A DNA stretch of 64,000 bases from Octopus bimaculoides (GCF_001194135.2 NC_068994.1:45055487-45119486); one strand, 5' to 3'; counted from the stretch's first letter, positions 7,265 through 46,731 are shown. Translations and numbers: made by a program. The notes: generated by a model from the sequence alone, not told the origin.

Positions 7265-10200
7265 TTTTGTATCTGTGTTTGTCCCCCCACCATTGTTTGA
7301 CAACCAATGTTGGTGTGTTTATGTCCCTCTGTAACTTAGCAGTTTGGCAAAAGAAACCAATAGAATAAGTACCAGGTTTACAAAGAATAAATCCTGGAGT
7401 CGGTTTCTTTGACTAGAAGTTTCTTTAAGGTGATGCCCCAACACGGCCACAGTTAAATGACTGAAACAAGTAAAAGAATGAAAGAATAGTGCCAGTTGGA
7501 GTAAACAATACAAAACAAAACCAAAGACAAAGTGTGACTCACCTGCATGTGATAGGACTGACTGGCAATTAGTTGTGAGGGCAGCACGAACTTTGACTTC
7601 TGATAAACCAAGCATTAAACCTCTGGTAGCAAGAATGAGAGTCAAGGAAAAAATGGTGGGCACCTAGACAATAACACTGGTTACATTGCATGATATACTA
7701 AACAGTGCTTTGGCGTCTGTGTGTGTGTGTGTGTGATGGGCTGGAGGGGACGGGTGGTAGTATTCAAACCAAATGTAGCTATGCCAAAATAGCAAAGAGA
7801 GGGAGAGAGTAAAAGAGGGGTAGTGAAAGTCTGATAATGTTAATGCAAAATAGAATACATATTAGTATCACTGTCTTAATGTCTACATTTCCATGCTTAT
7901 GAAATTCTCAAGTTTCTTGGCATGAGGTATCAAGACAAGGAAACACACACACCACTGTTGTTGTTGTTGGCACTCCGTCGCTTACGACGTCGAAGGTTCC
8001 AGTTGATCCGATCAACGGAACAGCCTGCTCATGAAATTAACGTGCAAGTGGCTGAGCACTCCACAGACATGTGTACCCTTAACGTAGTTCTCGGGGGGGA
8101 TATTCAGCATGACACAGTGTGACAAGGCTGACCCTTTGAATTACAGGCACAACAGAAACAGGAAGTAAGAGTGAGAGAAAGTTGTGGTGAAAGAGTACAG
8201 CAGGGTTCGCCACCATCCCCTGCCGGAGCCTCGTGGAGCTTTAGGTGTTTTTCACTCAATAAACATTCACAACGCCCGGTCTGGGAATCGAAACCGCGAT
8301 CGTATGACCGCGAGTCCGCTGCCCTAACCACTGGGCCATTGTGCCTCCACTACACACGCACACACACGTACATACAAACAAACAAACAAACAAATGCATA
8401 TATATATATCAGCAGTAGCAAGGTGTGCAGCTGTGCAGTGGGGCTAGACCCTAGACAACATAGTTGGGAAGCAAGCTTTTAATTAAAGCTGAGACTTCCC
8501 TCTGTCGTTATACTTAACTTCAAAACACAGAACACTGAGTAGAGACATAGGGATACCTCAAGTTTGAATAAATGAATAAGCTCTACTATATGTATTCAGT
8601 ACTTACACACTTCATTTGGAAATTGAGAGAGAGAGAGAGTGATGGGTTGGGAGTTCAGCAGTTATTAAGAGTATCTCTCTGTTATAAAGGATACAGTACT
8701 CTCACATCATAGGGTCCTCGTAAGTCTAAGGTCTAAAGTAAAAGAAAAGGAAAGTAAAAACAAAAATATATACAAGACATTTCAACAAAAAGAAAGACTG
8801 CTGAAGTTTCTATAAATAGATATACAGCACTTTGGGTCATAGTAGTTGTTTAACCACAGGTTGGATTTGATACAGGAGACCTATGATCACAAACCTTGCA
8901 GCCTTGACCATTTCATCTTGTATTTGCACATAATATATCTACAGACTTGTCATCCACTGTTCCTTTCTATTTTTTTAAGGTGGTAGGTTATGATTTCAGT
9001 GATGAACTGGTGTCCCATTCAAGGGGGAATCTGGGTTAAACTTTAGCCTTACGATCCCTGGGGTTTGTGACAAACCTGAGACCTAAGAAAGGTATGATTT
9101 TTCAAAGATATTTGGTTGATATTTTTAGCATATTGAGTAGCCACATAGAGGCTCTTTCGATGGCAAATGTCAGCTATTTGTAACAGTTATAGTGTTGTTG
9201 ATGATATCAGAAGCACATGGCTAAATGGTTAAAAATGTTGGCCTCACAATCATAAGGTTGTGGGTTCAATTCCCAGACCAGGAGAAATATTTTGTCCTTG
9301 AGCAAGGCCTTTCCTTTCATGTTACTCGAATCTACTCAGTTGAAAATAAGTACCAGCTTAGTGTTAATGTTGCCCTTTCTCTCTCTCATCAGCTATCACA
9401 TCAATGCTTCACAGAGTTAAAGGCTGAAAGAGCCTAGAGGGTATACATGACTACTTGTGACTACACAAGCAGCTAAAAATATTAGTGAAGCATGGTACAT
9501 GCTAACAGGTCATACTCACTGGCAAGTGATGGCTACATATTTGTTTCATGTTGGTGATGAGGAGGAGGAGGAGGATAATTTAGTTGCTGATGGTGATATT
9601 CAATATTGTGAAATGTTGACAACACAGGCAACAAAAACATAGAAAAAAAAACAAGCCTGGTATGGAGATTTAGAATTACAATTGTGTGTATGGGTGTGTG
9701 CACATGCATACATGCATATATATATAATCAAACTAAAACATAGGCTAAACAATCATATATTAATTAATATCGATTTATTACCAGGAAGCTAGCACATTTA
9801 AAGAATCCGAGAGAATCAGAAAAAATATCTGAGATCTCAGGAGATTAAAGTATATGTTTATATATAATGTTGACCACTAAAGTGGACATTTAATGTGCTA
9901 GAAATAGACCACGTGTCTACTAAGACCTAAATTGTTCTCAAAACAAAATTCAGTGGAATACCAAAGCGTATGTGGGCAACAGTGAAAATTACAGAAATAA
10001 AACATGTTTAATAATGTTTTATTTCTGTAATTTTCACTGTCTTGCCCGCATATACTTTGGTATTCCGCTGAATTTCGTTTTGAGAACAATTTAGGTCTTA
10101 GTAGACACGTGGTCTATTTCTAGCACATTAAATGTCCACTTTAGTGGTCAACGTTATATACAAAAACATATATNNNNNNNNNNNNNNNNNNNNNNNNNNN

Positions 10201-10451
10201 NNNNNNNNNNNNNNNNNNNNNNNNNNNNNNNNNNNNNNNNNNNNNNNNNNNNNNNNTATATATATATATATATATAAAAGATAATAAGAGTGAAAAAACT
10301 ACAGAAGGCTTGTGTTACATGGTTAAAGTATATATTTAAATTATGTCAGAAAAATGTTAGAAAAACGTTAGAAAGATGTTATAAAATCTTTTTGGTATAT
10401 AAACATTGTATTTTGAGAAATAACCGGTTTCGTGTTGTCTTTTCAAATTTC

Positions 10452-10488: not shown

Positions 10489-13400
10489 GATGTATGTGTG
10501 TGTGACTTCAGAACAGAAAAATATGTAAACAAGAAAAAAGAAAGAGACAGAGATGCTATGATGGCTTCATAGCTTGTCGTTGCTATGACAACTGGTAAAC
10601 AAATAACAAATAAATACTCACATTCTCACAGCCACTGCTTAAAATGATATTCTGAAAGAAGAAAATAAAATAAGATTGTCTGAGAAGTTATCAGATATCA
10701 GAATGTGTGTGTGTGTGTGTGTACATGCACATTTGTGTCTGAGTAAATGTTTGCATTCTGCACTGATTTTAAAATTTTTTGCTGAGTTTCTGGACAGTGA
10801 CAATCAACGACCATCACTTTCCACAGCTCAGCAAATGCTGAAGATGAGTGAAATGAAAAGGTTCCCTACTTGGAAAAACAAGTTATGAGTTATCAACAGG
10901 AGGGGCATGCATCCAACAACGCTTCAATTGTACATATTTTTATAACCCATACTAGTTAAGAAAAAAATGGCATAAAATGAACAAATGAATGAAATATTAC
11001 TACTGTGATGACATCGACAACATCAATGTTACTGTCATCATCATCAGCATCATTTAATGTGCGTTTTTCATGCTGGCATGGGTTGACTGGTTTGACAGGA
11101 TCCAATGAACCACAGAACTGCATCAAGCCCCAGTATGAGCTTTGGCATGTTTTTTCTGCAGTTGGATACCATTCCTAGTGCTAGTAGTGATGATGATGAT
11201 GATGATGATGATGATTGTGATAAGGATTTTCGAGCGAGATCGTTGCCAGTGCCCCTGGACTGGCTCTTGTGTGGGTGGCACATAAAGTACACCATTTCGA
11301 GCGTGGCTGTTGCCAGTACCGCCTGACTGGCCTTCGTAGGATTTTCGAGCGAGATCGTTGCCAGTGCCCCTGGACTGGCTCCTGTGCAGGTGGCACATAA
11401 AATACACCATTTGAGCATGGCCGTTGCCAGTACCGCCTGACTGGCCTTCGTGCCGGTGGCACATAAAAAGCACCCACTACACTCTCTGAGTGGTTGGCGC
11501 TAGGAAGGGCATCCAGCTGTAGAAACTCTGCCAAATCAGATTGGAGCCTGGTGTAGCCATCTGGTTTCACCAGGCATTAGTCAAATCGTCCAACCCATGC
11601 TAGCATCGAAAGCGGACGTTAAACGATGATGATGACATACATAGAAACCAATTTACAACTTACTTTTCCTTTACCAACTTCAATCAGAGTCTGGACGTTT
11701 GTGATGATGTTTCTCCGGGCCTCCTGGTCCCTAATCATGGGCCCATACTGAATCTCAAAATGTACACCACGTTCATAAGCCTGTTTGTTGCACAATAAAA
11801 GAAGGAAGGAAGGAAGGATGTGAATGATGCAGTTAATTAAACAATAGCATATAAATAAATGAATGCAAGCATGGTTGTGTGATCAAAGGTTTATTCTGCA
11901 ATCATTTGCTTTTGGGTTCAATCCCAATGCACAGCACCATGGGCAAGTGTCTTTTACAATAGCCTTAACAGTAACAAACGATGATTGATGTCACATCTCA
12001 AAAGACAACCACTAGATAACATTGACAAGTGTATTAATTTGATTTACCATCCATATTTATATATAAGATACTACAATTACCCGTCATTTTTGATGGCATG
12101 GGGGTCAGCTAGTTTAAATTACTGTAATTATTAAGCTGGTAGATGATAGAAAACTTGATACAGTGGCAGAAAGAATGCTTTGTATATATAGTGGCATTCG
12201 TTTACATTCTGAGTTCAAATTCCACTAAGTGGAACAATAAAATACAGTGCTAATCAAGTGTTAGAATCATCACAATCAACTACAGCCTCCTACAAAATTT
12301 ACTGGCCTTGTATCAATGTAAAAAAAAAAAAAAAAAGGTCTAACTTCTGTCATACACATGTGTATATGTGATCACATGATCACATCATCAAAATCTTGAA
12401 GCTATGCGATAATGTTCGTTTAATTCAAAGTAATGTGAATAAATAAGCATGACATTTGGCAGAATAATCTGAATGTTGAAGGAATGAAGGAACTACAACA
12501 AGGAAAAAACAAATGCAGAGATAGAAGAGGATGCGTAGGAGACATGTCAAACTGTGTCATATAGTATTAGTCCACTTACTGCGTGTAATGATGGGTACTT
12601 CAAATTAAAAGGAAGAAGCTTGGATAAATCCAGTGAGATGATGTCAACTTCCAATGTTTGACAGGCCGTCTGTGAAACAGCAAAAAAAAAAAAAAAATGT
12701 AAATGACATGGTTATACATAAAATTACAAACTATTCTACATATTTTTCTTCCAATTTNNNNNNNNNNNNNNNNNNNNNNNNNNNNNNNNNNNNNNNNNNN
12801 NNNNNNNNNNNNNNNNNNNNNNNNNNNNNNNNNNNNNNNNNNNNNNNNNNNNNNNNNNNNNNNNNNNNNNNNNNNNNNNNNNNNNNNNNNNNNNNNNNNN
12901 NNNNNNNNNNNNNNNNNNNNNNNNNNNNNNNNNNNNNNNNNNNNNNNNNNNNNNNNNNNNNNNNNNNNNNNNNNNNNNNNNNNNNNNGTGTGTGTACTTA
13001 CATATAAGAGACCAAAGTGTATGTATGCTGCCATATGTATATAAAAAGGAATACAAAAAATGGGAGAAAAACACAAAACATCTAGACAGATGATACAAAA
13101 AAGAGACAATAAAAAACACGGATGGGTCATTCGAAGTTTTCTTTCCTCAGTCGAGTTCCAGATTATCTTTGCAATTGCAGCTGGTTATACTCGAGATTGC
13201 TCCAATCTGGCCAGCCCCAAGGAAAAACTAAGCTAAGAGCATTAGATTCCTTGGAAGAAAGCAGTGAATGTAGACGAAAACAAGGACGGGAAAAAAACGG
13301 AGAAATGTTACACAAATACAAATGTAAATAACAAGATATAAAAACAGGTGTCTTTCGACTAAGGACGAATTATATTAAGCTGGCGTGTGTGAAAGTGAAG

Positions 13401-14963
13401 CCTTACGGCAGGGACATAAGAGATAACAGGCATGGGGAGGAATATAGATGTTGCACGGATGGTAGTCGAACCAAGAAAGAAAGGTCAGGCTTGGCCAAAC
13501 ACCAGATGCGTACGGTATTTGAGGACATGTATAATCTTTGTTTTAGAAAATAATAATGGCAGGCCCTCAGCTTACTCAAAAATGAAGAGACATGCTGTTA
13601 TTATGGTTATAAAGGCTGAGCATAGTAATTTAGAAATATCTCGATTTTTAAAAGTTGCCAGATCTTTCATCTACAAAGTTTGTGAGGAGCTTAAGACAGA
13701 AGATGGAAATGTATCACCAGTATCAAAGCATAGAAAGCATTCTAAATGCTCTGAAATCATCAGAACACCTGAATTTATCCAACAAGTTCAACAAACCGTT
13801 GATTACAATCCCAGAAAGTCCATGAGGTCAATTGCAAAAGATCTCCATATGTCAGAAGGAATGGTCAGAAATGTTATCCATGAATACATCAGATATATGA
13901 TGAGGATATATATGAGGATATATGATGAGGAAAGGTCAATTTGTCAGGAAAAGCAAAAGGAACTCACTACATCATATCTAAAAGGCTCTTCAACAAACTG
14001 AAAAATTCAGCTGAAGAAGATATGATTTGGTTTTTCTAAAACAAGAAAAATTTCAACCAAGATCAAAAAATTAACAGAAGAAATGACAGATGGTTATGTG
14101 CAGACCCTTCTGAAGTTCCAAGTGTTATGCATACAAAATTTCCTGCAACTGTCATGGTTTTAGGGGTTGTCAGCAATGAAGGACATGTGATGCCTCCTTA
14201 CTTCTTTCTACAAGGCCTTAGGGTTAACTCTACCACCTACATTGAGGTCCTGGAAATAATTGTTAAGCCCTGGATAGGCAGTGTATGCAATGGAAGGCCA
14301 TATGACTCTAGTAACACAGGAATGGATGGCTGAAAATGTTCATGATCACACAACCCCCAACATTACATGCATCATTTATTTAATAACAGTTTGACTCAGC
14401 TCCATGCAACTTAATGTTTGATAGGCTCATAGAACTATACTTGTGGGAGGGCTGAGGGAACCCAACAAAGCTGCATAGAACTGAGTCGAAATGTTATTAA
14501 GTAATGTGCGCACGCACACACACACACGTTAACCATTTAACGTTTAAACCAGCCAAATCCAGCCCAAATATTCTCTCTGTTTTATGTTTGAAGCAGTCAG
14601 ATCCAGCTTCTCAAACTGACCCTAGAAAGTAATTCTAAAAATAAACAATCACATCATTGAAATCTTGAAGCTTGGAGATAATGAATGATTAATTCAAAGC
14701 AATGTGAATGAATAAACATTACATTTGAGAGAGTAAGATTACCACTAAAGGGTTAATCGACTGTAAATTTACATAAATCACTCAAGGGCCGAGAAATTTC
14801 ATGCATTGCATTTATCAAACTAATGTTATACATACATATCATTAACAATACATGTACATACACAAGTACACATTAACAACATACATTATTAATAACACGC
14901 ACATACACACATATATAAATAATATATAAACACAGTATCAATGGCACGCACACATTATTAACA

Positions 14964-14994
<31 letters not shown>

Positions 14995-17900
14995 CATTCC
15001 AAGAAATGAGAGAAAAATCAAAAAACAAATAATGTCACTAAAGAATTGCAAATGAGTGTTATGTCAAGTCGGAGCTCAGATGCATATGACATGGCAGAGC
15101 TGTTTATGACATCATAACTATGTATAAGAACAACAGAAGCAACAGCAGCAACAACAACAACAATAACAAGAACAGCAACAACAAACTAACACCAACAAAA
15201 ACAGGCCAAATCTCTTTTCTCTTTAGCAATAATTGTTTCCCTTTCCTGCTGTTGCCCTGCTGTTCTTCTTGTAGTGAAAACTGTTCAGTCAAAAGATTTT
15301 TTCCAGCACGTGCCCTGCACTTTCTTTCTCCCTCCCTCGCATGCACACGTGCATACACACACACACACGCACTCACGCACACACACACATATATTCTCTC
15401 ACTCTCTTCCTTCTTTGATAATCTAATGGAGAACTTTCTTACCTGGAGTATTGCACAGGTAGACACAACTTCTTTCACCTCCCCACACAAGTCCCAGCAG
15501 TGTGACGACAACAACAACAACAACAACAACAACAACTACAACTACGACAGCTACAGCAAAAATAAGGACAGCGAAGACAACGAACTGGAGATTCGATTAT
15601 CGGCAATCTGTGCAGGAATCTTGCTTCTACTTACAATCTTCTTAACCACTGTCGTCTACGTGTCGAATATGTTCAACAATGCGGGGCTGGCTCTGTGGGA
15701 GGGCTGGGGAAACCCAACAACAAAGACAAAACGAGAGAAGGCTCGATGCTGGTGCGATGTCATAGCTCGGGCCTTGCTGGCTCCCAAGACGGAGAAGGTG
15801 ACACCAAGAGAAAGTTCAAACCCTGTGAGTTGTGGCGAAAATGACGTGAGTGACAGCAGAAGCAGCAACAGTAAGGTAGAACGATCTCTTATTATCAGAA
15901 AGCAAAATGATAAATTACTGACGAAGAAGAAATATCAAGAATTAAGGATTGTCATTGACTTTCGGTGAGATTCTGCTGAGATTTTTTTCCTTCTCTATTT
16001 TAACCTCCCATCAAATATTTTAAGTGTAGCACCACTGTTTGCATTTAGTATGTTCTTCCGTCTGCCCACACGCATTTAGGTCATAATGTTGCATTCCATG
16101 AAACCCCAGGTCAGCATTGACCAAACAGATCTGTAACCGAAAAACATTCAAGGGATACGCATACTTTCTTTTCCCCCCTCTGTAATAGGGTATCCTGGAC
16201 AACAACATTATCCAATTTGTTCTTATGTTAAGATGGTAAGGTCTGATTTGAGGGAGATTTACCTGTGATTTTTTTTAGAAAATGGAACAACTGTATTCAG
16301 TATGTTCTTCCATCTTTCTGAATACATTTAGGTCATAATGTTTGTATTCTATGAAACCCCAGGTCAGCAGTAAGCAAGCACATCTACGACCGAAAACATT
16401 TAAGGGATGTACTTTCTTTTCGCCCTCTGTACTAGAGTATCCTGGACAACAGCATTATCCAATTTGTCCTTATTTTAAGATAGTAGGGTCTGATTTGAGG
16501 GAGATTTAGCTGTAATTTTTTGCAAATGGAGTAACTGCATAGAACAGGCATGGGTAACCTTTTTCAAGAAGTGAGCTGCATGAGACATGGCTCATCATCA
16601 GATGAACCACATCATCATCATCATCGTTTAACGTCCGCTTTGACTGAGGACTGGCAAGCCAGAAGGCTGCACCAGGCTCCAATCTGATCTGGCAGTTTCT
16701 ACAGCTGGATGCCCTACTACTAAGAAAACTGAAAGAACTATTTTGTAAGGCATTGCCATTTAGAAATCCGCCGCAAGCTGCGCATGAAAAGCATAGAGAC
16801 TTCACTTATTACAGTCTATCTTGGCATTAAAGTTTAGTCCCCAAGTCATTGCTGATCCAGTGGACCTGATCAACATTATTCCAGCTGAGCCCATTCTGTC
16901 CAGGTCTAAATTATTCAATGTGCTCTTCCTTCTTTCTAAGATAGTAAGGTGTGATTTGAAAGAAATTTGGCAACGGGTTCTGTCAGGTGGGCAGAGGTTT
17001 CAGTAGTGTAATAATTTGCATGTAGGTCAATGTTTTAATTCTTTGACTTCAAGTTAGCTCCGAATAAGCAAGATTAAAAGCATTCCAACAATGGCCATTT
17101 CATCTTTATATCAGGCAGTATAGCAAGGACTATGTTATCCAATGTATCCCTTTTTAAAACAAAAAATTGTACAATATGATAAGAGACATTTGGCCATTAT
17201 TTTTAGCGAGTCTTGCAATTTCAAACAGGCTCCATGATTGCTTCATAAAGGTCTGCTTTGATCAAAGGGGTTCCAACTCAGACCAGTTCATTTATTTTTA
17301 ATAACCACAATATATCTAAGATTACAATATTGGACATGTACTTCTATTTTCTAAGATAGTAGGATTAATTTGAGGGAGATTTGGATCCAAGCAGCTCAAG
17401 TGACCATCCCATACTGCTGTCTTCTATCTATTCTAATGTTTCACATATTCCATAGTTTTTCCATATAACAATATTGCTTATTTTGTTGTTGTGGTTTGTT
17501 CTTTTATAAAGGAGAATGTTTTACGATGAAAGTAAACAAACATTTGTTCTTTTTTAGAAGTGTTGAGATGTATTGTAAGAAACAGAATTAAATTTATTTC
17601 TCAAACGCGTGATAATGCTATAAATAGCGTGATCAGGATAAATTATCCATATAATGCAGAAAAATACGTTACCGGCCAGCCGGCCAATTTTTCTGCATTA
17701 TATGGATAATTTATCCTGACCACGCTATTTATAGCATTATCACGCGTTTGAGAATGTTTTGTTACAGACATCAGAATGGTACTTGTATAAGATCTCAGTT
17801 CTGACTGAGCATATCTATGATGAAAATCATTACGACCTTGAGCATTTTTCTCTCAAAACACTTAAACTCTGTCGTACATGCACACTGATATTGCACATCC

Positions 17901-20900
17901 AGCAAAGCATACTAGCTTCATTTCTTTCAAGTCTTCACATGTCCTCTGCAATCACAGCCCAGGTTTCACTGCTGTATAGCATGACTGTTTGCACACAGGC
18001 ATCATACAATCTTCTTTTCACTCTGAGAAGNNNNNNNNNNNNNNNNNNNNNNNNNNNNNNNNNNNNNNNNNNNNNNNNNNNNNNNNNNNNNNNNNNNNNN
18101 NNNNNNNNNNNNNNNNNNNNNTATATATATATATATATATATATGTATATAGGTGCAGGCATGGCTGTGTGGTACCTTCGACAAGTGTCTTCTACTATAG
18201 CCTCGGGCTGACCAAAGCCTTGTCAGTGGATTTGGTAGACGGAAGCTGAAAGAAGCATGTCATGTATATATGTATGTGTGTGTGTGTGTGTGTGTATATA
18301 TGTTTGTGTGTCTGTGTTTGTCCCCCTACTATTGCTTGACAACCAACGTTGGTGTGTCTATGCCCCCGTAACATAGCGGTTCGGCCAAAGAGACCGATAG
18401 AATAAGTACTAAGCTTACAAAGAATAAGTCCTGGGGTCAGTTTGTTCGACTAAAGATGGTGCTCCAGCATGGCTGCAGTCAAATGACTGTAACAAATAAA
18501 AGAATGAAAGAAAGAATACAAACACCCACACACATACAAATCTGTGATTGTGAATGTGTATGTGTGAGTGCGTTTAGGTTAATGCCTCATAAAATTGGTG
18601 ATGCCGTTGAAGTAGAGTAATGTAGTAGTTCAACAAACACACATTGATAAATTAAATACCAAACTTTAAAATAATCACTGGGGTGACTATACTTGGCTAA
18701 ACCCTTGAGGGCAGTGCTTCATCGTGACCGTGTTCCAGTAAGTGGTAAAGGACGAAACGAACACCATACTTAATTAAATTTATTTCTGTAATTGTAATTG
18801 CAAACAATTAAGTTATGCTATTTACAAACATGCTTGACATGGTTGTGTCTTTGGTTACACCCCGATTCCCACTGAACCTTTACATCTGTATTTATATTTA
18901 TACGTGGAGGCGCAATGGCCCAGTGGTTAGGGCAGTGGACTCGCGGTCATAGGATCACGGTTTCGATTCCCAGACAGGGCGTTGTGAGTGTTTATTGAGC
19001 GAAAACACTTAAAAGCTCCACGAGGCTCCGGTAGGGGATGGTGGCGAACCCTGCTGTACTCTTTCACCACAACTTTCTCTCATTCTTACTTCCTGTTTCT
19101 GTTGTGCCTGTAATTCAAAGGGTCAGCCTTGTCACACACTATGTCACGCTGAATATCCCCGAGAACTACGTTAAGGATACACGTGTCTGTGGAGTGCTCA
19201 GCCACTTGCACGTTAATTTCACGAGCAGGCTGTTCCGTTGATCGGATCANNNNNNNNNNNNNNNNNNNNNNNNNNNNNNNNNNNNNNNNNNNNNNNNNNN
19301 NNNNNNNNNNNNNNNNNNNNNNNNNNNNNNNNNNNNNNNNNNNNNNNNNNNNNNNNNNNNNNNNNNNNNNNNNNNNNNNNNNNNNNNNNNNNNNNNNNNN
19401 NNNNNNNNNNNNNNNNNNNNNNNNNNNNNNNNNNNNNNNNNNNNNNNNNNNNNNNNNNNNNNNNNNNNNNNNNNNNNNNNNNNNNNNNNNNNNNNNNNNN
19501 NNNNNNNNNNNNNNNNNNNNNNNNNNNNNNNNNNNNNNNNNNNNNNNNNNNNNNNNNNNNNNNNNNNNNNNNNNNNNNNNNNNNNNNNNNNNNNNNNNNN
19601 NNNNNNNNNNNNNNNNNNNNNNNNNNNNNNNNNNNNNNNNNNNNNNNCACCACCACCACCACCACTACTACTACCTGTTTACTTTTTACTTTATTTAAAT
19701 TACTTCCTTTAATGTTATGCAAAAGATGGATGGATAGGTAAGAATGTACTACTGTATAAGTATATAGATTTGGTGCATCTCCAGTTTCTGTCTGATAAAA
19801 TAACAATTAGAAATAGCAGCCAAATCTTCAAATCATATGGAAAAAAAAAAGGAAGGAAAGGGAGGGAGAATACACTGGATGAATGTACCCTGAAGTTACC
19901 ATATTTAAATAAAAACAAGATCATAGGTCTGTCTAATTTGGGTTGCCCTAGGGTTAAGCAATACCTGGTATAAAACCTGCAAGAAATAGCAGCCAATGCT
20001 TTTCAAATGGCTACCTTTCCTACCATTTTGAAAAGGGGAGAGACATATTGGATGTCATTCTAGATATGGACTGTTCAAGAATGGGATGGATTGGCCTGGA
20101 GATAAACAACAACTAGAATAAACAGACAATTGTCAAGGAATTAGAGAAGAAATTCCAAATATGGAAGCAAAGCCTGAAATCACGAGGCCTCAAAACAAGG
20201 CTTCAAATAGGGCACATTCAGGAAGAAAAGATTTTAGTGCATTAAAGCTTATGGGAAGCCTAACTTTTCATATAAGACCCAGGGTGATTTTTTTAAAGAC
20301 ATTTCTTTTAAAAGTGCATCTTATGTGTCATTAAGTACAGTATGCTATGGGTGCACAAGAGGTTCAGTAGAATCACAGGTAAGCTGACAGAGAAAGATTT
20401 TGTAGGTGCCAGGTAAAGAAGAGTAATTAGTAGTTAGCACTAGAAACACCCATGTAATAAAATACTTCAAATGTTCCACAGGTATCCTAGAAGAAATCGA
20501 TAGCTTCTGTTACCAAGGTAACTTAATTAGCAGTGAAGGAGGGTATTCTGAAAGCAAAATTACTCAAAGTAAGAACAGAACGAGGAAAAAAATCAGGGAG
20601 CTTTTACCTCTGCAGGTAACACGAGGATATTTGTCAAGTGAAAGGCGGATTGTCATAAAAATGAAAATGCCACAGCCATCACTCGCAAGCAAGTATGATT
20701 TAGTAATTGTTTTAGGTTTTTAGATTTGGTAATTTGCTTTTGCTAATTGTTTTAGGTTCCTAACTACAGTTAGCAGGTTAGATGTCCTATCATGGCCATC
20801 TCTTATGTGTTTAAACGTACACTGTATTTATATAAATAATATATAGTTTACTACTAGTTTTTTTCTTCATGCTAGACCAGTGGTAGCAAAAACAGATCCA

Positions 20901-23185
20901 GTTACTTCAAGCTAATAAGGTGATTGACAATGTCACCTCCATTTAACAGTGCATGCCAGAACTAACCTCTATCTTTGGATAAACACTTCAATCTCTTTTT
21001 CTCTAATAATCTAATCTTAATCTTTCGAAAACATTATAGTTGTGTCCCATTCCCCAAAAAGGCAACCTCTCTGACTCTGCTACCAAGACCTATTGCTCAC
21101 ACTTTCAAAATCTCGATGGTGTTGGGGATACTCATTAACAACTACTATCTTCAACACTTTGAATCTTTCATCCTCAACCATATTTCTGTTGAAATACTTT
21201 GCCACTGTTTCTCAATTAAGTTTGAGAATAATGAAGGATTTAGTAAAATAACTTAGTCATTACTAAACTGGTGTTTAGACTGCAAATTAACATGAAATTT
21301 CAATGAAAGGTTGTAGGTTAGAACACTTTAAAACACTAAGGTTGTATCACAGAATAAGGAGCAGTTTCAGGTGGGTCAATATCAAAAAGGTTAATGATCA
21401 CAGGTTGCAGACTTTTATCTTGCAGCCCGCTTGATACTTTCTTGAAATGGGTTTATTCAAACAAACATTTAAAAAATGTTATCAAAAATTAAAGATTGTA
21501 ATGAAAAGTAAAAAAGAAAGATACTACTGTTACAAGTTTATAATTTTAAACAAATGCAAAGTATGCAAAATTCTTGATTCTGTAATTTGATTATTTGACT
21601 ATTAGTGTATAAAGTATACAAGTGGCCCTCAAAGAACTTTCTGCGATTAAAGTGGCCCACAGTGTAATTCGAGTTGACCAGGCCGGTTTTAAGCTCTTGC
21701 CCAAAGTACCACACAGTGGAACTGAACCCAAAACCACATGGTTGAGAAACAATGATCTTAAGCCATACAGCCATAATCAACTACACATTAAAAAAAAACA
21801 CTACAGCACTCCCACAGAACATGAAGAGCACACTACTACAAACCTGAAAGTGGCTACAAATACCAGGGCTCACCAGTACTTATGAATCATTCCTGGCAAT
21901 CTTACATCCTCTTCACAGAAAAGGATGTATCATAAAGACTGATCATCCTCTTTGGAGCCAGATAATACTTCAGCTTTCAACAAATTTTCTGTAAAAATCT
22001 TATTCATCACTCATAATTGGAACACCGCTCCCACATCTAGGACAGTGCAGCACTACAATACACAGAGACAACATCAAAACAAAGAGCCCTCTGGCCAATG
22101 ACATGATGTCGCTAGCTAACACACTCCAATTTCTAGTCCAGTTTCCTCCCTCTGCCATTTCTTCTATCACTACTACAGTGGCGCTACTCCTCAAAGCCAG
22201 TTACTAGAGTCACCTCCCTTTATGTCCTCTTGACTCACTTCTCTCCCTTTTTGTAACCCACACTGTATCTAACCACACCCCAGTCCAGGCACTGTGCTAA
22301 CCACTACACTTAGTCCTTTCTTCCCCAGAACATCAATCCGCTCGAGTTCAGTCCTTACTTGTACTTTTTTTAAAGTTTATCTGGCAACCATCAACTTGTT
22401 TCATAGTAACATTAACCTGGAATGAGATCACTGTGCGTGTCTGACAATTTGACACAGTTGACTGGGCTAACGATTCTGCCAGCCTGCCACCTCAATACTG
22501 CAAAATATATTAGCAATAGTACAACAACAATGGCAACAGTAACAACAACAACGACAAAATTAATAATTGCTTCTAACACAGACATAAGGCTTGAAAGTTG
22601 GGGAAGGTTTGACAGATACTTTGGCCCTGGAAGGAGAAACGGCAAAGTTGATCTGAGCAGGAGCTGAGATTGGAACATAAATTGCCAGAACATATGCCAC
22701 AAGGCATTTTGTCTGATACTCTAGTGATTCTGCCAAGTCACCATCCTAGTGACAACAGTAGGAACAATGACGACAATACTAACAACAACAACAACGTTAT
22801 CAATCATCATCATCATTTTAACATCTTCATTTCCATGCTTGTATGGGTTGAATGGAGTTTATTGAGGCCAATTTTCTATGGCGGGATGCCTTTCCTGTTG
22901 CCAACAATCACTTGTTTCTAAGAGAGATGATATTTCCCTATGGACAGACATACAGACATATTTATGCAGAATATTGGAAATAACTAATACAGCTTGTAAG
23001 ACAGTGACACTCACTAGTACCACAAAGAAACAAACACAATCACACACACACAAATATATATATATATATATAGGTGCAGGCATAGCTGTGAGGTAAGAAG
23101 CTTGCTTCCCAACACATGGTTCTGGGTTCAGTGCAACAAGTGTCTTGTGAGTAGATTTGGTAGATGGAAACTGAAAGAAGCTCAT

Positions 23186-23232
<47 letters not shown>

Positions 23233-26200
23233 GTAAAATATAGGGTAGTGAGTTTTTTTAGAGATTTCACTACCAATGGCCTAGCATGTGTAAAAAGTCA
23301 ATAGACAACATATTTTCAATATAAAATAGTGTACATTTAAACACAAGAGAAAACTGCCTTCAGCAGGCAGTTTTNNNNNNNNNNNNNNNNNNNNNNNNNN
23401 NNNNNNNNNNNNNNNNNNNNNNNNNNNNNNNNNNNNNNNNNNNNNNNNNNNNNNNNNNNNNNNNNNNNNNNNNNNNNNNNNNNNNNNNNNNGAGAAATCT
23501 TCAAAAGGAATGAAAAATAAAAACTTTTACCATATTTTAATTTGGTCGGACCTAGGTTTCAAAATTTTTTAGCAAATAAAATAATTTGCTAGGCGAAATT
23601 TCTCATCACGCCAAAACACTAACATATAATTAAGAGACGAATAACATGTGACTCGTCGTTATATGTTAGTGTTATGGTGCAATCACTGATGAGAAATTCT
23701 GCCTAGCAAATTATTTTATTTGCTAAAAAATTTTGAAACCTAGGTCTGACCGGATTAAAATAACAAGGTAAAAGTTTTTATTTTTCATTCCTTTTGAAGG
23801 TTGCTCTTAAATGTGGTTTTGGCCGTTTTGACTACTTCTCCTAGCATGTAAAAACTGCCTGTTGAAGGCAGTTTTCTCTTGTGTTTAAATGTACACAGCC
23901 CGGAACTACAGCAAAAGACACTTGCCCAAGGTGCCACACACTGGGACTGAAACTCAAATGGTTGGGGAGCAAACTTCTAAAACCACACAGCCATGCTTAA
24001 TAACAAAAACAATGATGACAACAACAACGAAATGATAAGTCATTATCTACTACTACTACTACTACTACTGCTACTACTACTACTACTACTGCTACTACTA
24101 CTACTACTACTACTACTACCACTACCACTACATAATCATGACAACAGCAGTCAGTGTTTGCTCTATTTGTTCTATTTCTTGTTTTTCCCTTCAAGAGACA
24201 TCTGCATAGTCAACGCAAACCGAGAGAAGGGGAGAGTTTGTTGGTGGGCTGACATAGACAGAGACAAATTGTGGAAAACAACAGCATCAACAACAACATC
24301 GATGATGATGATGATGGTCGGTGCCAACCACCACAATGGTCAACTGAGTAACGCCTGCAGTCTACGCTACATCCAATACACGCATCTGTCCCTCTTGCAG
24401 AAGGTGTATGACTACCTGCAACAGTTGCTTCAAATTGTGGGAGACGGATGCACAATCTGTGGCACTGATGAACAGGTCATCGTCAAGGTAAGAACAATGG
24501 TGCACACACACACACACACACACAAAGAGATGCACCAAAATCTATGGAGAGAATAACAGAGGGAACAGTTTGGGAGTAGGAGTAATGGAAACAGGGAGAG
24601 AGGAAAGGGAAGGGGTCCAAAGTGTAATGGTGAAGGGGTAGGTTGGGTTGATAGACCTAGGGGTATATATGCATGTGTGTGTGAGGAGGTTATATCAGTC
24701 TAAAATCTGGTGATGTTGTTTGTGTCATATCCCTTTATGACCTGTAAATTAGTGGTGCAACAAATAGAGATCAATAAAAATATCTGTAGTCAATTAAATC
24801 AACTAAAGTATTTGACTGGAAAGATGGAAAGCAAAGTAGGCTTTGATTGGTTTTGAACTCAAAGCATAAAGTTACACCAATAAATATTGCAAAGCATTTT
24901 GTCCATCACCCTAACAATTCTGCCAGTGTACTACCAATATGTACCATATTTACTCATAGGTCGCACCCCTAATTTAGTGTTAAATCTTGGTACAAATTTT
25001 TTTCCTACCACAACTTTGCTCCATGTATAAGCCACATACCAGGTTTTTAAGTTAAAATCATATAAAATATTGCAACTTATACATGACCAAATACAATATT
25101 AGTAAAAAAAATGTTTTGTCGCAAAAGATGAACTTAATAGTGATAAACACTATAACCTTTGTATTGTATTGGTGCATAATTAATGACTTTTTTTTTAATT
25201 GTAAATAAAACCTGTAAATTAAATTATGAAATTGTCATTAATTATGCACCAACCCAATAGTTTTTCCCATGATATTATTTCAGATTCTGATGGTAAAAGA
25301 TGCCATAGATTTATGGCTCAGATGCCAAAGAGATGAAATGTTGGACGAAAATGAAACTGATGAGGAAAGAGATACTAAGGAAGCTGAAGACGTAAAGGGT
25401 TCAACAGATATCGACAGTCTGGTGGCCGAGGGCAAGAAAGGCTCTAGCATGACCATAAGTAACAGCAGCAGTAGTAGCAACAAATATGCAGTTTGTCTCA
25501 ACACCTTAATAGTGGACAGAGATGGCATGCTTGGTGCTGGCAGGAACTGCTCCAAGAGCCAGCTGCTCGATGCTGTCCAAGAAGGGGACAGTACCAGAGC
25601 CATGACTGAGAGGACAATGGGGAGCATGACATGAGCCTACATACTTGAACAATGGGTGTTTAATGGAGCAAGAATCTCCATCAAATTTGACTGTTGGACA
25701 TCACAGTGATACACACACCTCAGTCCTCTCTCGTTTACCCAGAAAATAAAAACAATCATCACTGAAAAAGGATCTTAGAGTTTTAGAATCAGGAAATAAA
25801 GAATAAGTTAAACCTTGTTTGTTTTAGAATTACTTGGTGTACCACAACCACAAAATGACCACCACCACCACACTACATAATTATATTAGTTGAAGGCACA
25901 TGGCTTAATGGTTAGGGTATTCAGCTCACAACTGTATGGTCAGGAGTTTGATACTCAGCATTGCATTGTGTCCTTGAGCAAGACACTTTATTTCATGTTG
26001 TTTCAATCCACTCAACTGGCAAAAACGAGTAGTGCCTGTATTTCAAACCGGCAGCCTTGTCACATTCTGTATCACATTGAAAATCCCTGAGAACTTTGTT
26101 AGGGATATGCTTAGCCTCTTGCATCTTAATTTCACAAGCAGGCTGTTCTGTTGATTGGATCAACTGGAACCCTTGTCGTCATATTAGTCCTCACTACCAC

Positions 26201-29200
26201 ACTAAATAGTCACATTACCCAAACTACATCACTCATCCTCACAACTACACTACAAGTACTATGTCTGCACTACTTACCACATTACACCAAACATCCCATA
26301 CAGCCCTACACTTGTCCTCAGGGGTGCTGAAAAGTTCTTGGCTTTGGGTAAAACAAAATACAGGAGGATCAGTTAATTATGATTTTATTCAACATATTCC
26401 CCTCTCAGATTGCAGCAGTCCTTCAGTTTTTCTAAGCCCTGTGAAAGAACTTGGAAGGTTGGACCTCCAACCAGGCCTTTCACGATACCCTTAAAGCCAA
26501 GAACTTTTCAGCACCCTCTCATATACATGTACTCAGAGCAACATTATACACCCTAGACATTACTACAACTCTGTATTCCACACATCCTCATTACCATACC
26601 ATGCCATCAAACCTACACTCCAATCAGCCAATCAATCACACCATTTCAAAGTCAGCAACAAGGACCAGGATTAGACTAAATCCTTGAGACTTTTTAAGAT
26701 ATAGAAGCTACAATTACTTGCAAATATTTCCTTAGTTAATGAAATAACGGTAGCAGCTGCCATAGAAGCTGCAGTAGTCACTGCTGCTGCAGCCGCTGTT
26801 GCCAATGCCACTACCACTTTAAAAACTTTGGGTGTCTTAAGCCAATAAGGTTGCCTTTATGTGGTCTCTTAATTTGCTAAAAACAGCAGCTAAGTTTCCC
26901 TTAAATCTCACCCTGCTGTCTTATGAAAAGGTCAGATTGGATGATGTAGTCTTCGATACACTATGGGAAAAAGATGGAATGAAAGAATGGTAGAATGTCT
27001 GATCCAGAGCTGAGATGGGGTGAAACAACAACTGCTCTCTTTCACTCTGTCTGTCTGTCTGTCTCTCACTCTCTCTCTCAATACACATACAAAATTAGAT
27101 AAAGTAGAATACAAAGGATTAGCACACATGAAAAAGGTCCTTGTCACTTGGTTGCACAGCCAGTATGTCATAGGCTTGGATGTCTGCAGAATGCTGTAAG
27201 AACACAAAAACAATAAAGAGCATGGTTAATGAAATTGCAACATGGCAGCACAGAAGATAGAGAAGAGATATGTGAAGCAATGCAAATGGCACACAGACAG
27301 GTACTAACTAACGCAAAAGACCTTTATTTTATCATCACTGTGTCTTACTTAACTCCAATGCAGCTCTGATTGATTAGATCTATAATCAAACATGTTCCAA
27401 TCATAACTATTCCATCCATTTGTGAGATATTCTTGCTTTAACTCCACTACCCAAAGTTTCTTATTAAAGGGATAGGATGTGCTCTGAGAGAAATTTGGCC
27501 GCTGTTTCTAGCTTGTCAAGCAATCACCTAGAGGATGATTCTTCAGTGGCTCTTGTCATTGTGTCAAGTGTTTTTTGTTAGTTAACTTCCATAGTCAGTG
27601 GGGCTATGATATGAAGATAGCAATCACAACATAGCTGAACATATATTAACCCATCTCATCAAGGGAGAGCAAACTTTACTTAGTTTGTGGATAAAGATTT
27701 AGTTGTTATTTTCAACAGATCAAGTGATGACATAAAAGCTAATCCCTTAATGGGGTAGGGGTCCTCAAACAGGTTGGTATTAAATGGGTTAACATACTCT
27801 CACAACAAAAAACATGTAAACAAATTACTCACCAAATTATGAACCTGCTCTGCCTTGGAGAATATTAAAGTCAAACGAGAGAGCTGCTTCAGTTTAGAAC
27901 CAGTATCCTGCAGCATAACATTGTACAACATAATATAATTTGTGTAGAAGAGGTACAATATTATATATATACTGTGGTGTGAAAGTACAATATTATAAGT
28001 AGTAGGTGATCGATAAGGCCCCAAGATACCTGGCACTTTGCTGTATTCAAGAAGACCCATCCTTCATAGCAGAAGTGTTAAGGTCACTTGTGACCCTGGT
28101 GAAGAGGATTATCCTGTGGGAGTTGTGTGCCAGTGCCACATAAAAGTGTTTGTTCAGTGGCATGTTAAAAGCACCCAGCACACAGCACACACTGTAAACT
28201 GGTTGGCATCAGGAAGAGCATCCAGCTGTAGAAATCAAGCCAAATCAGACTGGAACTGGTGCGGCTCTCCAGCTTGCCAGCTCTGGTCAAACTGTCCAAC
28301 CCATACCAGCATGGAAAACAGACATTAAAGGATGACAACGATGATATATACATACATACACACACATGTATATTTATTCCACATACATTTTCTATACCAT
28401 ATTTTTATAGGCAATAGCCTTGTTGGGCATATCAGTTCAAAGACTGACCCAACAGACCAATGAACCATAGATTGTGTGAAGGCCAAATTCACACACACAC
28501 AATGACGACCACCACCACCACTGCCACCACCGTCATCATCATTTAATGTTCGATTTTCATGCTGGCATGGGTTTAACAGTTTGAATGGAACTGGTGAGCC
28601 AGAGGCCTGTACCAAGCTCCAATGTCTGCTTAGCCATGGTTAATAATGATTATTTATTCACATTGCTTTGAATGAATCAGGCCTTATTTCGTAGCTTCAA
28701 ACACAACTGAAAACAATACCTCTGCCTTCACTAAGATGGAGGTAAAAATTGACAAAGCTGGAATAAATACGGCCTTTTGACCAAACAGACAGGAATGATG
28801 GGTAACGCCTGAAAGAAATCATGAATGGATATAGAAAGAAAAACAGCAAGAGAGGAGATAGATGTTGACCAGCAAGCTAAGTGTCCAGTGGCAAAAGGCA
28901 GAAAGATGGGAAAATTAGTCACGGGTCACGTGTGGACAATAGATAGAAGGGAAGGAGGATGAAAGAGAGGGAAAGAGAGAGCAGTAGAGAGAACAGGGAA
29001 GGAAGGAAGTGAGAAAATCTACAATTATGAGTGAGATGACGAGAGAGAGGAAGAGAGGAAGTTGGGATGGTAGAAAAGGAATATGCGAAGTTCTCAGTCT
29101 TATCATTAAAGGCATGAAACTGTGTATTAGTATTTCGGTTGATAACTGATGAAGAATTAGGGTCCCTCTGTTTCTGTCCTATGTGTACATTTTTGTAGTA

Positions 29201-37358: not shown

Positions 37359-38025
37359 CTTGAGATGTTTCCTTTATTTGAAAACAGACGAACCCGGTTC
37401 AGAGACAACGCGAGAAGCAAAGAGACGAAACTGACATGAAATCAAAACAAAACAAAAGAGAGGCGATAAATGAAGGGACATAACTCAATAGCCGCTAAAC
37501 GATTTCATCTTTCGACTTCAACAGATCATAACGAATATCTTAAGTCTCTCCCAATGTTACTTCATAGTCTAACAAAAACACGCGCACAAAATATTTTTAT
37601 TCAACGAAGCATGCAGTTAAAGGAATTTTGGGAGAAAGAAAATTTCGAAAATGTCGTTATTAAGACAAAAAAAAAATATATAGGTTACTCAAAAGAAGCG
37701 TCAAAGACATTTACGTCCCCACCCTCACGAACCAGTAAAATCGATTCGGGTGACGTTCAGTTTGGAATATCTGCAGGTCGATGACTGCTAAAAACATGGG
37801 TGGGAGAGAATTTCTGAAGTTGCAGCTCTGGGAAGAAATAATGTTAAAAGTACTTTATTGCGGTCTCTGGGGTGTAAGACGCAATAAAAGTAGCGAGGGG
37901 GGGGAGGGAATTTAGTTGCATTTGGTGGGTCTAGTAGCAAGAGGTAAAACAGCTGGCAGGTTCGGTGTGGTGATGCTTTTATAATGACGTTAGACGTAAC
38001 AATGTATTTGTAGGCTAGTAATACA
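37359..38025. promoter_or_regulatory. CpG-rich RPP30 promoter region, possibly bidirectional
   Basis: Directly upstream of the RPP30 ATG. CpG is visibly more frequent than in the gene body. A short + strand ATG exon candidate follows at 38026-38043. Confidence 0.45.
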
Positions 38026-38559
38026 ATGCCTCGAAGAGAACGTGTAAGCAGTTTGCATATTCAGATGTGCAGAGGCCGTTCTAGGAATGTAAAAAGATTA
38101 ATAAAAAAAAAATCTCGTGAACTCGTGGTTGGCGATCAGCCGGCTTACAAAACAATTACCTGAAGATATTTAATCAAATCATGACAAACACATTTTTCAA
38201 ACGTTAAAAAAAAACCCACATTTTCTCAGTTATTAGAGGGTATTCAAGATTCCTTGTGTTTGGTCCTCAAAACCCAAGAGCTTCCAATATATTTAAATGT
38301 TTATAAAAATTTATCCAATTTAAAAAATAAAATTTTACCACGGGGAAGAGATGACTTGACTAATCATATCAACTTCAATTTTTATCAGGTGATATCTTTC
38401 GGATAAACTTAGTCAAGAAAGATATTTTTGAAGCCCNNNNNNNNNNCCCCCAATGTGAACATGGGATTGAACAAATTGTTTAGGGTGAGACATAACAAGA
38501 GAAGAATAGGATGTATTAAATGTGTTTGTAAAGAGTCCATGTCTCACTTGAGTAAAGGA

Positions 38560-39430
38560 GTTATGTCAGTACACATGCATGGTACACAACAATTTTTGTT
38601 TGCCTTGTGAGGCCATGCTGGGACCAGACATGAGACTGAAGAGACTGGAAGGAATCAGTTGCTGTCTGCAGCCTGAAAGATACTTCATCATCCAAGGAGC
38701 AAGAACGGCTGAGTGTGCTGCCCAGGTAGACAAACTTTTCTACCATTTTCAGTATTCTTCCTTCAACCAAGATAGCTGGTTCCACATATGGATTTCCTGG
38801 TGCAGGCTGGAACATTACAACAATCTTGTCCAGGCTAATGCTGAGTCCAAATGCCTTGCAAGAAGCAGAAATACGATTCATTAGTAGTTGCATGCCGTCC
38901 ACTGTATGAGTGACTAAGTCACAGTCATCTGTATAAAGGTCACAAATAAGATACTGGAAAACTTTTGAATTGGCAGCAAATCAGTGCAGATTAAAGAGAC
39001 AGCCAGAAGATCGATATCTGACATATATTCCCAGAGAGCTAACCTTATCAAAAGCATGAGTAAAAGCAGCAGCAGAGTACAAAGAAAAGAGAGCTGGAGC
39101 AAGAATGTTACCCTGCTTGACACCATTCTCTACAGGAATGGGTCCCGCCATGTCACCACCAACATTGACTCAAGCCTCCATCTCATCATGAAATGATTTA
39201 ATTATAGATACAAAGTGATCTGGACATCCAAGTTTACCAAGTATTTTCCATAGAAAGGCCCTATTTACAGTATCAAAGGCCTTGTTAAATCAATGACTAC
39301 CTGGACAAGATCCATATTCTGCTCATAGCACTTCTCTTGCACCTGTCTTGCTGTGAAAAATCATATCCATTGTCCCTCTACCAGATCAGAAGCCACATTG
39401 AAATTCAGATAGGACATCATTTATGAGTTA
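38560..39430 (-). mobile_element. Decayed RTE/BovB-like reverse transcriptase fragment
   Basis: GVKQGNILAPALFSLY, LYTDDCDLV (YADD-like), FGLSISLDKIVVM, VEKFVYLGSTLSR, TKIVVYHACVL, with stops and frameshifts. Confidence 0.88.
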
Positions 39431-42172: not shown

Positions 42173-42307
42173 NNNNNNNNNNNNNNNNNNNNNNNNNNNN
42201 NNNNNNNNNNNNNNNNNNNNNNNNNNNNNNNNNNNNNNNNNNNNNNNNNNNNNNNNNNNNNNNNNNNNNNNNNNNNNNNNNNNNNNNNNNNNNNNNNNNN
42301 TTTATAT

Positions 42308-45328: not shown

Positions 45329-45382
<54 letters not shown>

Positions 45383-46685: not shown

Positions 46686-46731
<46 letters not shown>

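What the first reader, a model, noticed from the sequence alone, without database searches (positions are those of the whole stretch)
15566..25750. Unidentified multi-exon gene nested antisense inside RPP30 intron 5
Seen: four + strand segments with AG/GT boundaries whose phases chain (1, 2, 0) into a stop-free ~310-aa product, followed by AATAAA. All lie within the 14.5-kb intron 5 (12670-27127) of minus-strand RPP30. Exon 2 is invisible in the ORF track. The core (DICIVNANREKGRVCWWADID..LRYIQYTHLSLLQKVYDY..ILMVKDAIDLWLRCQ) looks globular, but I cannot assign it to a family. A near-IQ motif (LQVTRGYLSSERR) may be chance. Inference: a lineage-restricted or unannotated gene embedded in a housekeeping gene, which could explain why this intron is much longer than the others and could imply transcriptional interference or sense-antisense dsRNA.
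Basis: partly seen in the sequence, partly recalled or inferred. Interest (0 to 1): 0.8.

Follow-up and report, generated by a model that had tools for sequence, protein, structure and literature searches.

The report
Unannotated two-exon gene inside octopus RPP30 intron
Two of the four proposed exons form a real, previously unannotated small protein-coding gene on the strand opposite RPP30 inside its longest intron, while the two upstream "exons" are a chance chain, one of them a dead retrotransposon fragment.

Summary
The four + strand segments exist and chain stop-free as described. Chaining alone proves little: the 11 kb upstream of exon 3 holds 2,662 open AG..GT segments and over 400,000 two-segment chains into exon 3.

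Exons 3 (24196-24487) and 4 (25284-25634) are supported by other genomes.
- A closely related genome (L001) keeps 25242-25741 at about 95% identity with no indels. The adjacent intron shows 24% mismatches plus indels.
- A distant genome (L002) holds both exons in order, with donor and acceptor at the same phase-0 positions.
- A 51-residue core spans the junction. Its differences fall 15/7/30 by codon position, with pN 0.18 and pS 0.94. That is purifying selection on a protein.

Exon 2 matches the C-terminal part of a LINE ORF2 and is frameshifted against its upstream piece.

The core has no Pfam, PDB or annotated-protein relative. The host gene is RPP30 on the minus strand.

Function, the 5' end, expression and conservation of the nesting remain untested. 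This is an ordinary lineage-restricted nested gene.

The parts
24196..24487 (+). It has a strong acceptor (ttcttgtttttcccttcaag|A) and donor (AAG|GTAAGA). The C-terminal 40 codons (24368-24487) are the first part of the conserved core. The N-terminal part is low-complexity, including an (ATG)5 run, and is not conserved.
   Evidence: Homolog in L002 at 10127-10246 with the donor at the same phase-0 position.
24302..24316 (+). Five in-frame ATG codons, candidate start codons. The last has A at -3 and G at +4. Starting at the first ATG gives a 178-aa two-exon CDS.
   Evidence: The L002 homolog has its ATG in the same exon (L002 10001). Start-codon use is inferred, not shown.
24488..25283 (+). Intron (GT..AG, phase 0) between the two supported exons. 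It is 796 bp here and about 3.7 kb in L002.
   Evidence: There is no assembly gap inside it.
25284..25634 (+). The first 11 codons (ILMVKDAIDLW) complete the conserved core.
   Evidence: 95.4% identity to L001 with no indels, against 24% mismatch plus indels in the adjacent intron. dN 0.035 and dS 0.10. The acceptor and first codons are conserved in L002 at 13942.
25635..25830 (+). Probable 3' UTR. AATAAA at 25745-25750 is present in the window only. AATAAA at 25795-25800 is conserved in L001.
   Evidence: 25635-25741 shows 4.8% mismatch to L001. Signals located. The transcript end is inferred.
20482..20692 (+). Probably not an exon.
   Evidence: A tblastn probe recalled from memory hits 20487-20612 together with the collinear piece 20348-20404 in another frame (E 1.3e-4). 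Smith-Waterman score 70 against 26.7 +/- 4.2 for shuffles, with 0 of 5000 reaching it. No homolog in L002.
15566..15824 (+). It sits in a patch that keeps its CpGs (15501-16000, o/e 0.84 against a window median of 0.27).
15120..15968 (+). Its stop codon lies inside a donor-like TCG|GTGAGA (15964/15965), which would join exon 3 in frame through a split CGA codon.
   Evidence: No Pfam, PDB or exact-match support. Speculative.
27125..27205 (-). Host gene RPP30: the exon immediately upstream of the host intron, in RPP30's direction.
   Evidence: (PDB 6ahr_I, E 3.3e-7).
12583..12666 (-). Host gene RPP30: the exon immediately downstream of the host intron.

Best explanation
Window 24196-25830 (+) holds the last two exons of a real, unannotated, taxonomically restricted protein-coding gene. 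It is nested on the strand opposite RPP30, inside RPP30's 14.5-kb intron.

The minimal product is about 178 aa, using the ATG cluster at 24302-24316. It has a roughly 51-residue conserved module, YIQYTHLSLLQKVYDYLQQLLQIVGDGCTICGTDEQVIVK|ILMVKDAIDLW, which the conserved phase-0 intron splits. A fast-evolving acidic and Ser-rich tail follows.

Exon 2 is a dead LINE ORF2 fragment that stays open because it is read in the element's old frame. The true 5' exon or exons are unknown. The strong, apparently conserved acceptor at 24195/24196 suggests that at least one exists.

Shown: conservation, splice-site positions, coding-type substitution pattern, host gene and strand.

Inferred: the protein acts through its conserved amphipathic-helix module as a protein-binding or oligomerisation unit, with lineage-specific low-complexity tails. 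The nesting itself is probably incidental rather than regulatory. My confidence in this functional part is about 0.3.
For: 1. Orthologous comparison with a close relative (L001, collinear with window 25049-26169). The block 25242-25741 is about 95% identical without indels. The CDS shows 4.6% mismatch against 24% plus 20 gap columns in the intron just upstream (Fisher p = 1e-12). The stop codon and acceptor are conserved.

2. Exhaustive HMMER search of 1.84 billion representatives. The only true hits are P0001 (exon 4) and P0002 (exon 3).

3. P0002's contig (L002) carries both exons on one strand, in order. The donor ...IVK|GTAAGT and the acceptor ...TTCCAG|GTTTTGATGGTGAAAGATGCC sit at the same codon positions as in the window. 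Reciprocal tblastn gives E = 1e-13 to 5e-15 for exon 3 and about 1e-3 for the exon 4 start.

4. Across the 51-codon core, nucleotide identity is 66%. Differences fall 15/7/30 at codon positions 1/2/3, with pN 0.18 and pS 0.94 (Fisher p = 1.5e-15).

5. Within exon 4, window against L001, dN/dS is about 0.34.

6. There is one copy of the core in the window and one in L002, and no nucleotide repeat overlaps exons 3 or 4.

7. Host gene: the flanking minus-strand exons match human RPP30 residues 96-143, and further exons are collinear.

8. Against exons 1-2.
Against: - No transcript evidence of any kind was available. Both related ORFs come from unspliced genomic-type contigs.
- Only three genomes are in hand, and the identity of the two other organisms is unknown.
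- dN/dS below 1 in exon 4 against the close relative is only marginal (p 0.02-0.10). The 3' UTR-like stretch is as conserved as the CDS, so part of the constraint could act at the RNA or DNA level.
- Outside the 51-residue core the octopus and L002 proteins do not align.
- The start codon and 5' exons are undefined.
- The AlphaFold model is unusable (mean pLDDT 36.5), so the proposed helix-mediated binding role rests on sequence pattern alone.
- The LINE assignment of exon 2 relies on a probe recalled from memory. Its strong hits to two other relics in the window (E 6e-10 and 2e-6) are the only validation.
Confidence: 0.75

Rival explanations
1. Exon 1 supplies the start, and the LINE-derived exon 2 has been exonised.
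For: AG/GT borders and compatible phases exist. The exon 1 donor CCT|GTGAGT is good. The exon 1 region retains CpGs like an unmethylated 5' end (o/e 0.84 against a median of 0.27). Exon 3 has a strong acceptor that needs some upstream exon.
Against: Over 400,000 equivalent chains exist. Exon 2 is a frameshifted LINE relic with a weak polypyrimidine tract. Exons 1-2 have no homolog in any database or in L002. Only 26 codons of exon 1 follow the first ATG. The three exon groups lie on different contigs of the scaffold.
Confidence: 0.08
2. The gene has a different 5' coding exon in the same neighbourhood. The 282-aa ORF 15120-15968, or its non-repetitive C-terminal 130-180 codons with a TM-like segment, splices from the donor at 15964/15965 directly to exon 3. 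That would give a membrane-anchored protein of roughly 350-490 aa.
For: The ORF's stop codon lies inside TCG|GTGAGA, and the resulting phase (2 bases left over) is exactly what exon 3 needs (split codon CGA). It is the longest ORF in the intron. The local CpG patch supports it. The hydrophobic stretch LSAICAGILLLLTIFLTTVVYV is visible.
Against: This was found post hoc. The first 150 codons run through microsatellites. There are no Pfam, PDB or exact-match hits and no homolog in the 10 kb upstream in L002. About two non-repetitive ORFs of this length are expected per window by my own rough estimate. It lies on a different contig from exon 3.
Confidence: 0.15
3. The conserved block is a non-coding functional element, with the ORF incidental. 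Candidates are an exon of an antisense lncRNA or an intronic regulatory or structural element of RPP30.
For: The 3' UTR-like part is as conserved as the ORF (4.8% against 4.6% mismatch). dS in exon 4 (0.10) is lower than the flanking intron divergence. The opposite strand is also open (25280-25627). dN/dS against the close relative is only marginally below 1.
Against: The core shows a 15/7/30 codon-position pattern, with pS saturated while 67% of residues are kept, across a conserved intron in a distant genome. This is not expected for non-coding constraint. There is no unusual RNA folding (z = -0.35) and no Rfam family. The antisense ORF shares third codon positions with the + frame, so it is a shadow of it.
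Confidence: 0.07
4. Exons 3-4 are a relic or a domesticated piece of a transposable-element gene.
For: The intron is full of TEs: mariner-like ORFs, LINE relics, SINEs and a MITE-like hairpin. Database coverage of cephalopod TEs appears thin, since even the LINE in exon 2 found nothing at E <= 1e-3.
Against: There are only two relatives among 1.84 billion representatives and a single copy per locus. The orthologous copy is far more conserved than its flanks, unlike a decaying relic. It has a spliceosomal intron at a conserved position with very different lengths. It scores at background against the LINE probe.
Confidence: 0.04

Closest known systems
Nested intronic genes on the opposite strand of a host gene. 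Textbook examples recalled from memory: OMG/EVI2A/EVI2B in an NF1 intron, F8A1 in F8 intron 22, and the pupal cuticle gene in the Drosophila Gart intron.
   Same: A small gene of few exons lies inside one long intron of a housekeeping host gene, on the other strand.
   Different: Expression, an own promoter and conservation of the nesting are untested here. The 5' end is undefined, so full containment within the intron is shown only for the two supported exons.
Taxonomically restricted (orphan) genes of cephalopods, described in cephalopod genome papers (recalled from memory; the titles listed were not read).
   Same: No Pfam, PDB or annotated relative. The only relatives are unnamed ORFs from two other assemblies. 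A short conserved module carries divergent low-complexity tails.
   Different: This gene appears not to be annotated at all in the protein collections searched. The taxonomic span is unknown because the source organisms of L001 and L002 are not given.
C-terminal region of ORF2 of RTE-like non-LTR retrotransposons of marine invertebrates.
   Same: Collinear matches to the ...WVHKxCSG... and ...VDxFCYLGxxxS...FRxLxPL... segments. Similar relics lie at 18027-17845 and 38764-38522.
   Different: Heavily decayed and frameshifted. The RT domain is not seen, and the upstream side runs into gap 19250-19647. The probe was recalled from memory, not taken from a curated library.

Membership tests
Nested antisense intronic protein-coding gene | Exons lie inside a single intron of the host gene | tested here: met
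   Exons 3-4 and the 3' UTR (24196-25830) lie between RPP30 exons 12583-12666 and 27125-27205. This depends on the scaffold order across four gaps. The 5' exon or exons are unknown.
Nested antisense intronic protein-coding gene | Opposite strand to the host | tested here: met
   RPP30 exons read on the minus strand. The conserved coding frame is on the plus strand.
Nested antisense intronic protein-coding gene | Coding sequence under purifying selection | tested here: met
   Core: pN 0.18 against pS 0.94, codon-position differences 15/7/30, p = 1.5e-15. Exon 4 against the close relative: dN/dS about 0.34, marginal.
Nested antisense intronic protein-coding gene | Independent transcription and splicing | not testable with these tools
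   No RNA-seq is available. Exact-match look-ups of window ORFs found no contigs.
Nested antisense intronic protein-coding gene | Nesting conserved in other species | tested here: inconclusive
   No RPP30 exon is seen in the 17.9 kb of L002. L002's intron is about 4.6 times longer and the contig ends 2.5 kb after the last ORF.
   tblastn hits at 20487-20612 and 20348-20404, E 1.3e-4. None of 5000 shuffles reach the score. The probe was recalled from memory.
   Three-frame translation of 19648-20100 shows no clear RT motif. A 398-N gap lies immediately upstream.
IQ calmodulin-binding motif | [FILV]Qxxx[RK]Gxxx[RK] spacing | tested here: not met
   In LQVTRGYLSSERR the R-G pair sits one residue too early. 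There is no Pfam IQ hit at E <= 10. The segment lies in the LINE relic.
Any described protein family (Pfam-A, PDB) for the conserved core | Significant profile or sequence match | tested here: not met
   No Pfam hit. The PDB profile search gave only chance hits at E >= 0.24 in the non-conserved tail.
RNase P/MRP subunit p30 (host gene) | Sequence match to RPP30 across collinear exons | tested here: met
   PDB 6ahr_I residues 96-143, E 3.3e-7. Six collinear minus-strand hits (human sequence recalled from memory).

The most novel reading that the evidence does not exclude
The 51-residue module defines a new cephalopod-specific protein family that is old enough to have saturated synonymous sites. 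Its antisense nesting in RPP30 would be conserved and functionally relevant. Overlapping sense and antisense transcripts would form dsRNA that couples the two genes or feeds the extensive coleoid A-to-I editing machinery. That would also explain why synonymous sites and the 3' UTR of exon 4 are about as conserved as the protein.
Probability: 0.08. Interest if true: 0.55.

Novelty: new member of a known kind. Interest (0 to 1): 0.3.

Why it matters
If confirmed by transcripts, this adds one missing gene to octopus annotations and a new short conserved protein module with no described relatives.

It also shows that splice-site and frame chaining alone cannot define exons in a repeat-rich intron. 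Half of the proposed model was a retrotransposon relic.

It does not by itself bear on RPP30 function. The regulatory ideas (transcriptional interference, dsRNA) remain untested.

Tried and rejected
**Searches that gave nothing**
- Pfam on the full chain and on each part: nothing.
- Word-indexed protein search with exons 1+2: nothing.
- The same search with the spliced L002 protein: nothing, not even its own ORFs. That search was probably swamped by K-rich words and was wasted.
- Exact-match look-ups of the window ORFs 25269-25634, 23993-24556 and 15120-15968: not on record.
- Cluster look-ups: single-member clusters with no names.
- Profile search against PDB: chance hits only.
- Rfam on 12000-28000: no family.
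- RNA folding of exon 4 plus UTR: z = -0.35.
- tblastx of the exon 2 region against the window: no second copy of that LINE.
- BLASTP of exon 2 against the CR1-like ORF at 38561-38902: no alignment.
- Paper search for the two sample accessions: nothing.

**Steps that failed or did not apply**
- AlphaFold2 on the 178-aa product with a 3-row alignment: mean pLDDT 36.5, so no fold search was run.
- The bacterial promoter and terminator scan is not applicable to this genome.

**Hits rejected as spurious**
- P0003, a 1,456-aa bacterial repeat protein with a composition-driven match.
- The HopBF1 hits at E about 0.3, which fall in L002's non-conserved tail.
Full report
**Observation**

The window is AT-rich eukaryotic DNA with 12 assembly gaps. 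The four + strand segments (15566-15824, 20482-20692, 24196-24487, 25284-25634) have AG before and GT after. They chain in phases 1, 2, 0 into a stop-free product that ends at TGA 25632-25634, with AATAAA at 25745.

The three gaps named by the scan program lie in the proposed introns 1 and 2, so no reading frame crosses a gap. Exon 1, exon 2 and exons 3+4 do sit on three separate contigs of the scaffold. Exons 3 and 4, their intron and the next RPP30 exon share one gap-free contig (23492-32579).

**Host gene**

The minus-strand exons ending at 27125 and starting at 12666 translate to ...AYDILAVQPSDKDLFH / ACQTLEVDIISLDLSKLLPFNLKYPSLH. These match human RPP30 residues 96-143 in PDB 6ahr_I (E 3.3e-7). 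A tblastn probe with human RPP30, recalled from memory, gives six collinear minus-strand hits. The implied introns are about 2.7, 14.5, 0.8, 2.9 and 1.1 kb. The finding therefore lies in the longest RPP30 intron seen, on the opposite strand.

**Is the chain more than chance?**

For exons 1-2 it is not.
- The 11 kb upstream of exon 3 contains 2,662 distinct open AG..GT segments of 60-400 nt.
- 888 open segment-and-phase combinations feed exon 3 in frame.
- 408,310 two-segment chains exist.

**Exons 3 and 4 are real**

A word-indexed search with exons 3+4 found one protein, P0001 (121 aa, 90% identical). It lies on a 1.2-kb Logan contig, L001. L001 is collinear genomic DNA for window 25049-26169.

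| Segment (window vs L001) | Mismatch | Gap columns |
|---|---|---|
| Intron 25060-25241 | 24% | 20 |
| CDS 25284-25634 | 4.6% | 0 |
| 3' UTR-like 25635-25741 | 4.8% | 2 |
| 25742-25860 | 20% | 35 |
| 25861-26169 | 15% | 7 |

The acceptor and the stop codon are identical in both. dN is 0.035 and dS is 0.10. This is suggestive but only marginally significant (p 0.02-0.10).

The exhaustive HMMER search of 1.84 billion representatives with the 310-aa chain returned only three proteins:
- P0001;
- P0002, 93 aa, matching the end of exon 3;
- P0003, a spurious bacterial repeat protein.

P0002 lies on a 152-kb ENA contig, fetched as L002. L002 carries the exon 3 homolog at 10127-10246, followed by GTAAGT right after the ...IVK codon. 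At 13942 it carries TTTTTTCCAG|GTTTTGATGGTGAAAGATGCC, the homolog of the exon 4 acceptor and first codons. Both splice sites sit at the same phase-0 codon boundary as in the window. The intron is 3.7 kb there against 0.8 kb here.

The 51 residues across the junction are 67% identical (34 of 51), and the 153 nucleotides that encode them are 66% identical:

    window: YIQYTHLSLLQKVYDYLQQLLQIVGDGCTICGTDEQVIVK|ILMVKDAIDLW
    L002:   YIHYTDHILLQRVYNYLQELLQLVGDGCKIIETEHQIIVK|VLMVKDAIGLW

Differences fall 15/7/30 at codon positions 1/2/3. pN is 0.18 and pS is 0.94 (Fisher p = 1.5e-15). Reciprocal tblastn confirms one copy per locus.

This is the signature of a spliced protein-coding sequence under purifying selection. 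Outside the core the two proteins do not align. L002's terminal exon is much longer: 263 aa and Lys-rich, followed in another frame by a 252-aa Cys-rich ORF.

**Exon 2 is a retrotransposon relic**

I recognised ILEEIDSFCYQGNLISSEGG...KKIRELLPL as the region downstream of the reverse-transcriptase domain of a common marine-invertebrate RTE-like LINE. A probe written from memory validates itself by hitting two other relics in the window: 18027-17845 (E 6e-10) and 38764-38522 (E 2e-6).

It also hits the collinear WVHKRFSRITGKL piece at 20348-20404, which lies in a different frame and outside the proposed exon (joint E 1.3e-4).

The Smith-Waterman score is 70 against 26.7 +/- 4.2 for shuffles, with 0 of 5000 reaching it. 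Exons 1, 3 and 4 score at background. So exon 2 is open because it is an old ORF fragment. The near-IQ motif lies in it, has the wrong spacing and gets no Pfam hit.

**Exon 1**

No homolog was found anywhere.

Two observations keep the neighbourhood interesting.
- 15501-16000 retains CpGs (o/e 0.84 against a window median of 0.27), and no repeat was detected in it within the window. Other CpG-retaining patches in this intron coincide with the mariner-like ORFs, a LINE relic, SINE copies or the hairpin repeat.
- The longest ORF in the intron (15120-15968, another frame, with a TM-like stretch) ends with its stop inside TCG|GTGAGA. That phase would join exon 3 in frame.

This alternative 5' exon is a post hoc lead with no homology support.

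**Start codon**

Exon 3 has a strong acceptor. Its first bases (AAG|xGACATC) resemble those of L002, so an upstream exon is likely. In-frame ATGs at 24302-24316 would give a 178-aa protein. L002 has its ATG in the same exon.

**What it is and how it may work**

The gene is an unannotated, lineage-restricted nested gene. The conserved module has the hydrophobic spacing of an amphipathic helix (LLQKVYDYLQQLLQIV), then GDGC and a second hydrophobic segment.

My best guess is that it is a protein-binding or oligomerisation module carrying fast-evolving charged tails. My confidence in that is about 0.3. It is an inference only:
- Pfam and PDB give nothing;
- the AlphaFold model is unusable (mean pLDDT 36.5);
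- the RNA shows no special folding (z = -0.35);
- no Rfam family matches.

**Limits**

- There is no transcript evidence.
- Only three genomes are available, and two are of unknown identity.
- Conservation of the nesting could not be tested.
- One of three protein searches was wasted.

Noticed in passing
The first half runs through (AAC)n and (CA)n repeats. The last ~140 aa are non-repetitive with a TM-like stretch. Its stop sits inside a GTGAGA donor that is in phase with exon 3. The local CpG o/e is 0.84 against a window median of 0.27.
   Followed up: partly
window 17845-18027 (-), abutting gap 18031-18121: A LINE ORF2 C-terminal relic (LRVKRRLYDACVQTVMLYSSETWAV...), E 6e-10 to the recalled RTE-like probe. 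A second relic of a related element lies at 38522-38764 (-).
   Followed up: partly
window 23500-23795, with 23329-23374 / 23851-23896: A near-perfect long hairpin (MITE-like palindrome) beside gap 23375-23491. A further 46-bp inverted pair (97.8% identity) lies outside it. The gap probably hides repeat sequence.
   Followed up: no
window 13432-14001 and 14127-14333 (+); 44648-45046 (-): ORFs that look like mariner/Tc1-type transposase, judged by eye only with no family search. The first pair lies inside the same RPP30 intron and retains CpGs, which suggests a young insertion.
   Followed up: no
window 18897-19249, 42301-42651, 34945-35261, 8004-8350: A SINE-like repeat family at 93-94% identity. 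One copy is cut by gap 19250-19647. Older copies lie at 26029-26183, just downstream of exon 4, and are shared with L001.
   Followed up: no
window 36500-38500 and 45250-50750: Large CpG-rich zones (o/e 0.9-1.5) in an otherwise CpG-depleted window. The first may mark the 5' end of RPP30, the second possibly another gene's 5' end or intergenic DNA.
   Followed up: no
L002 13942-14730 and 14678-15436 (+): In the distant relative the terminal exon continues as a 263-aa Lys-rich ORF. A 252-aa ORF rich in CxC repeats overlaps it in another frame. Neither has a Pfam hit. It is unclear whether they form one protein.
   Followed up: partly
window 25280-25627 (-): A 115-aa ORF antisense to exon 4. Its third codon positions coincide with those of the + frame, so it is most likely a shadow ORF of the + strand CDS.
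   Followed up: yes
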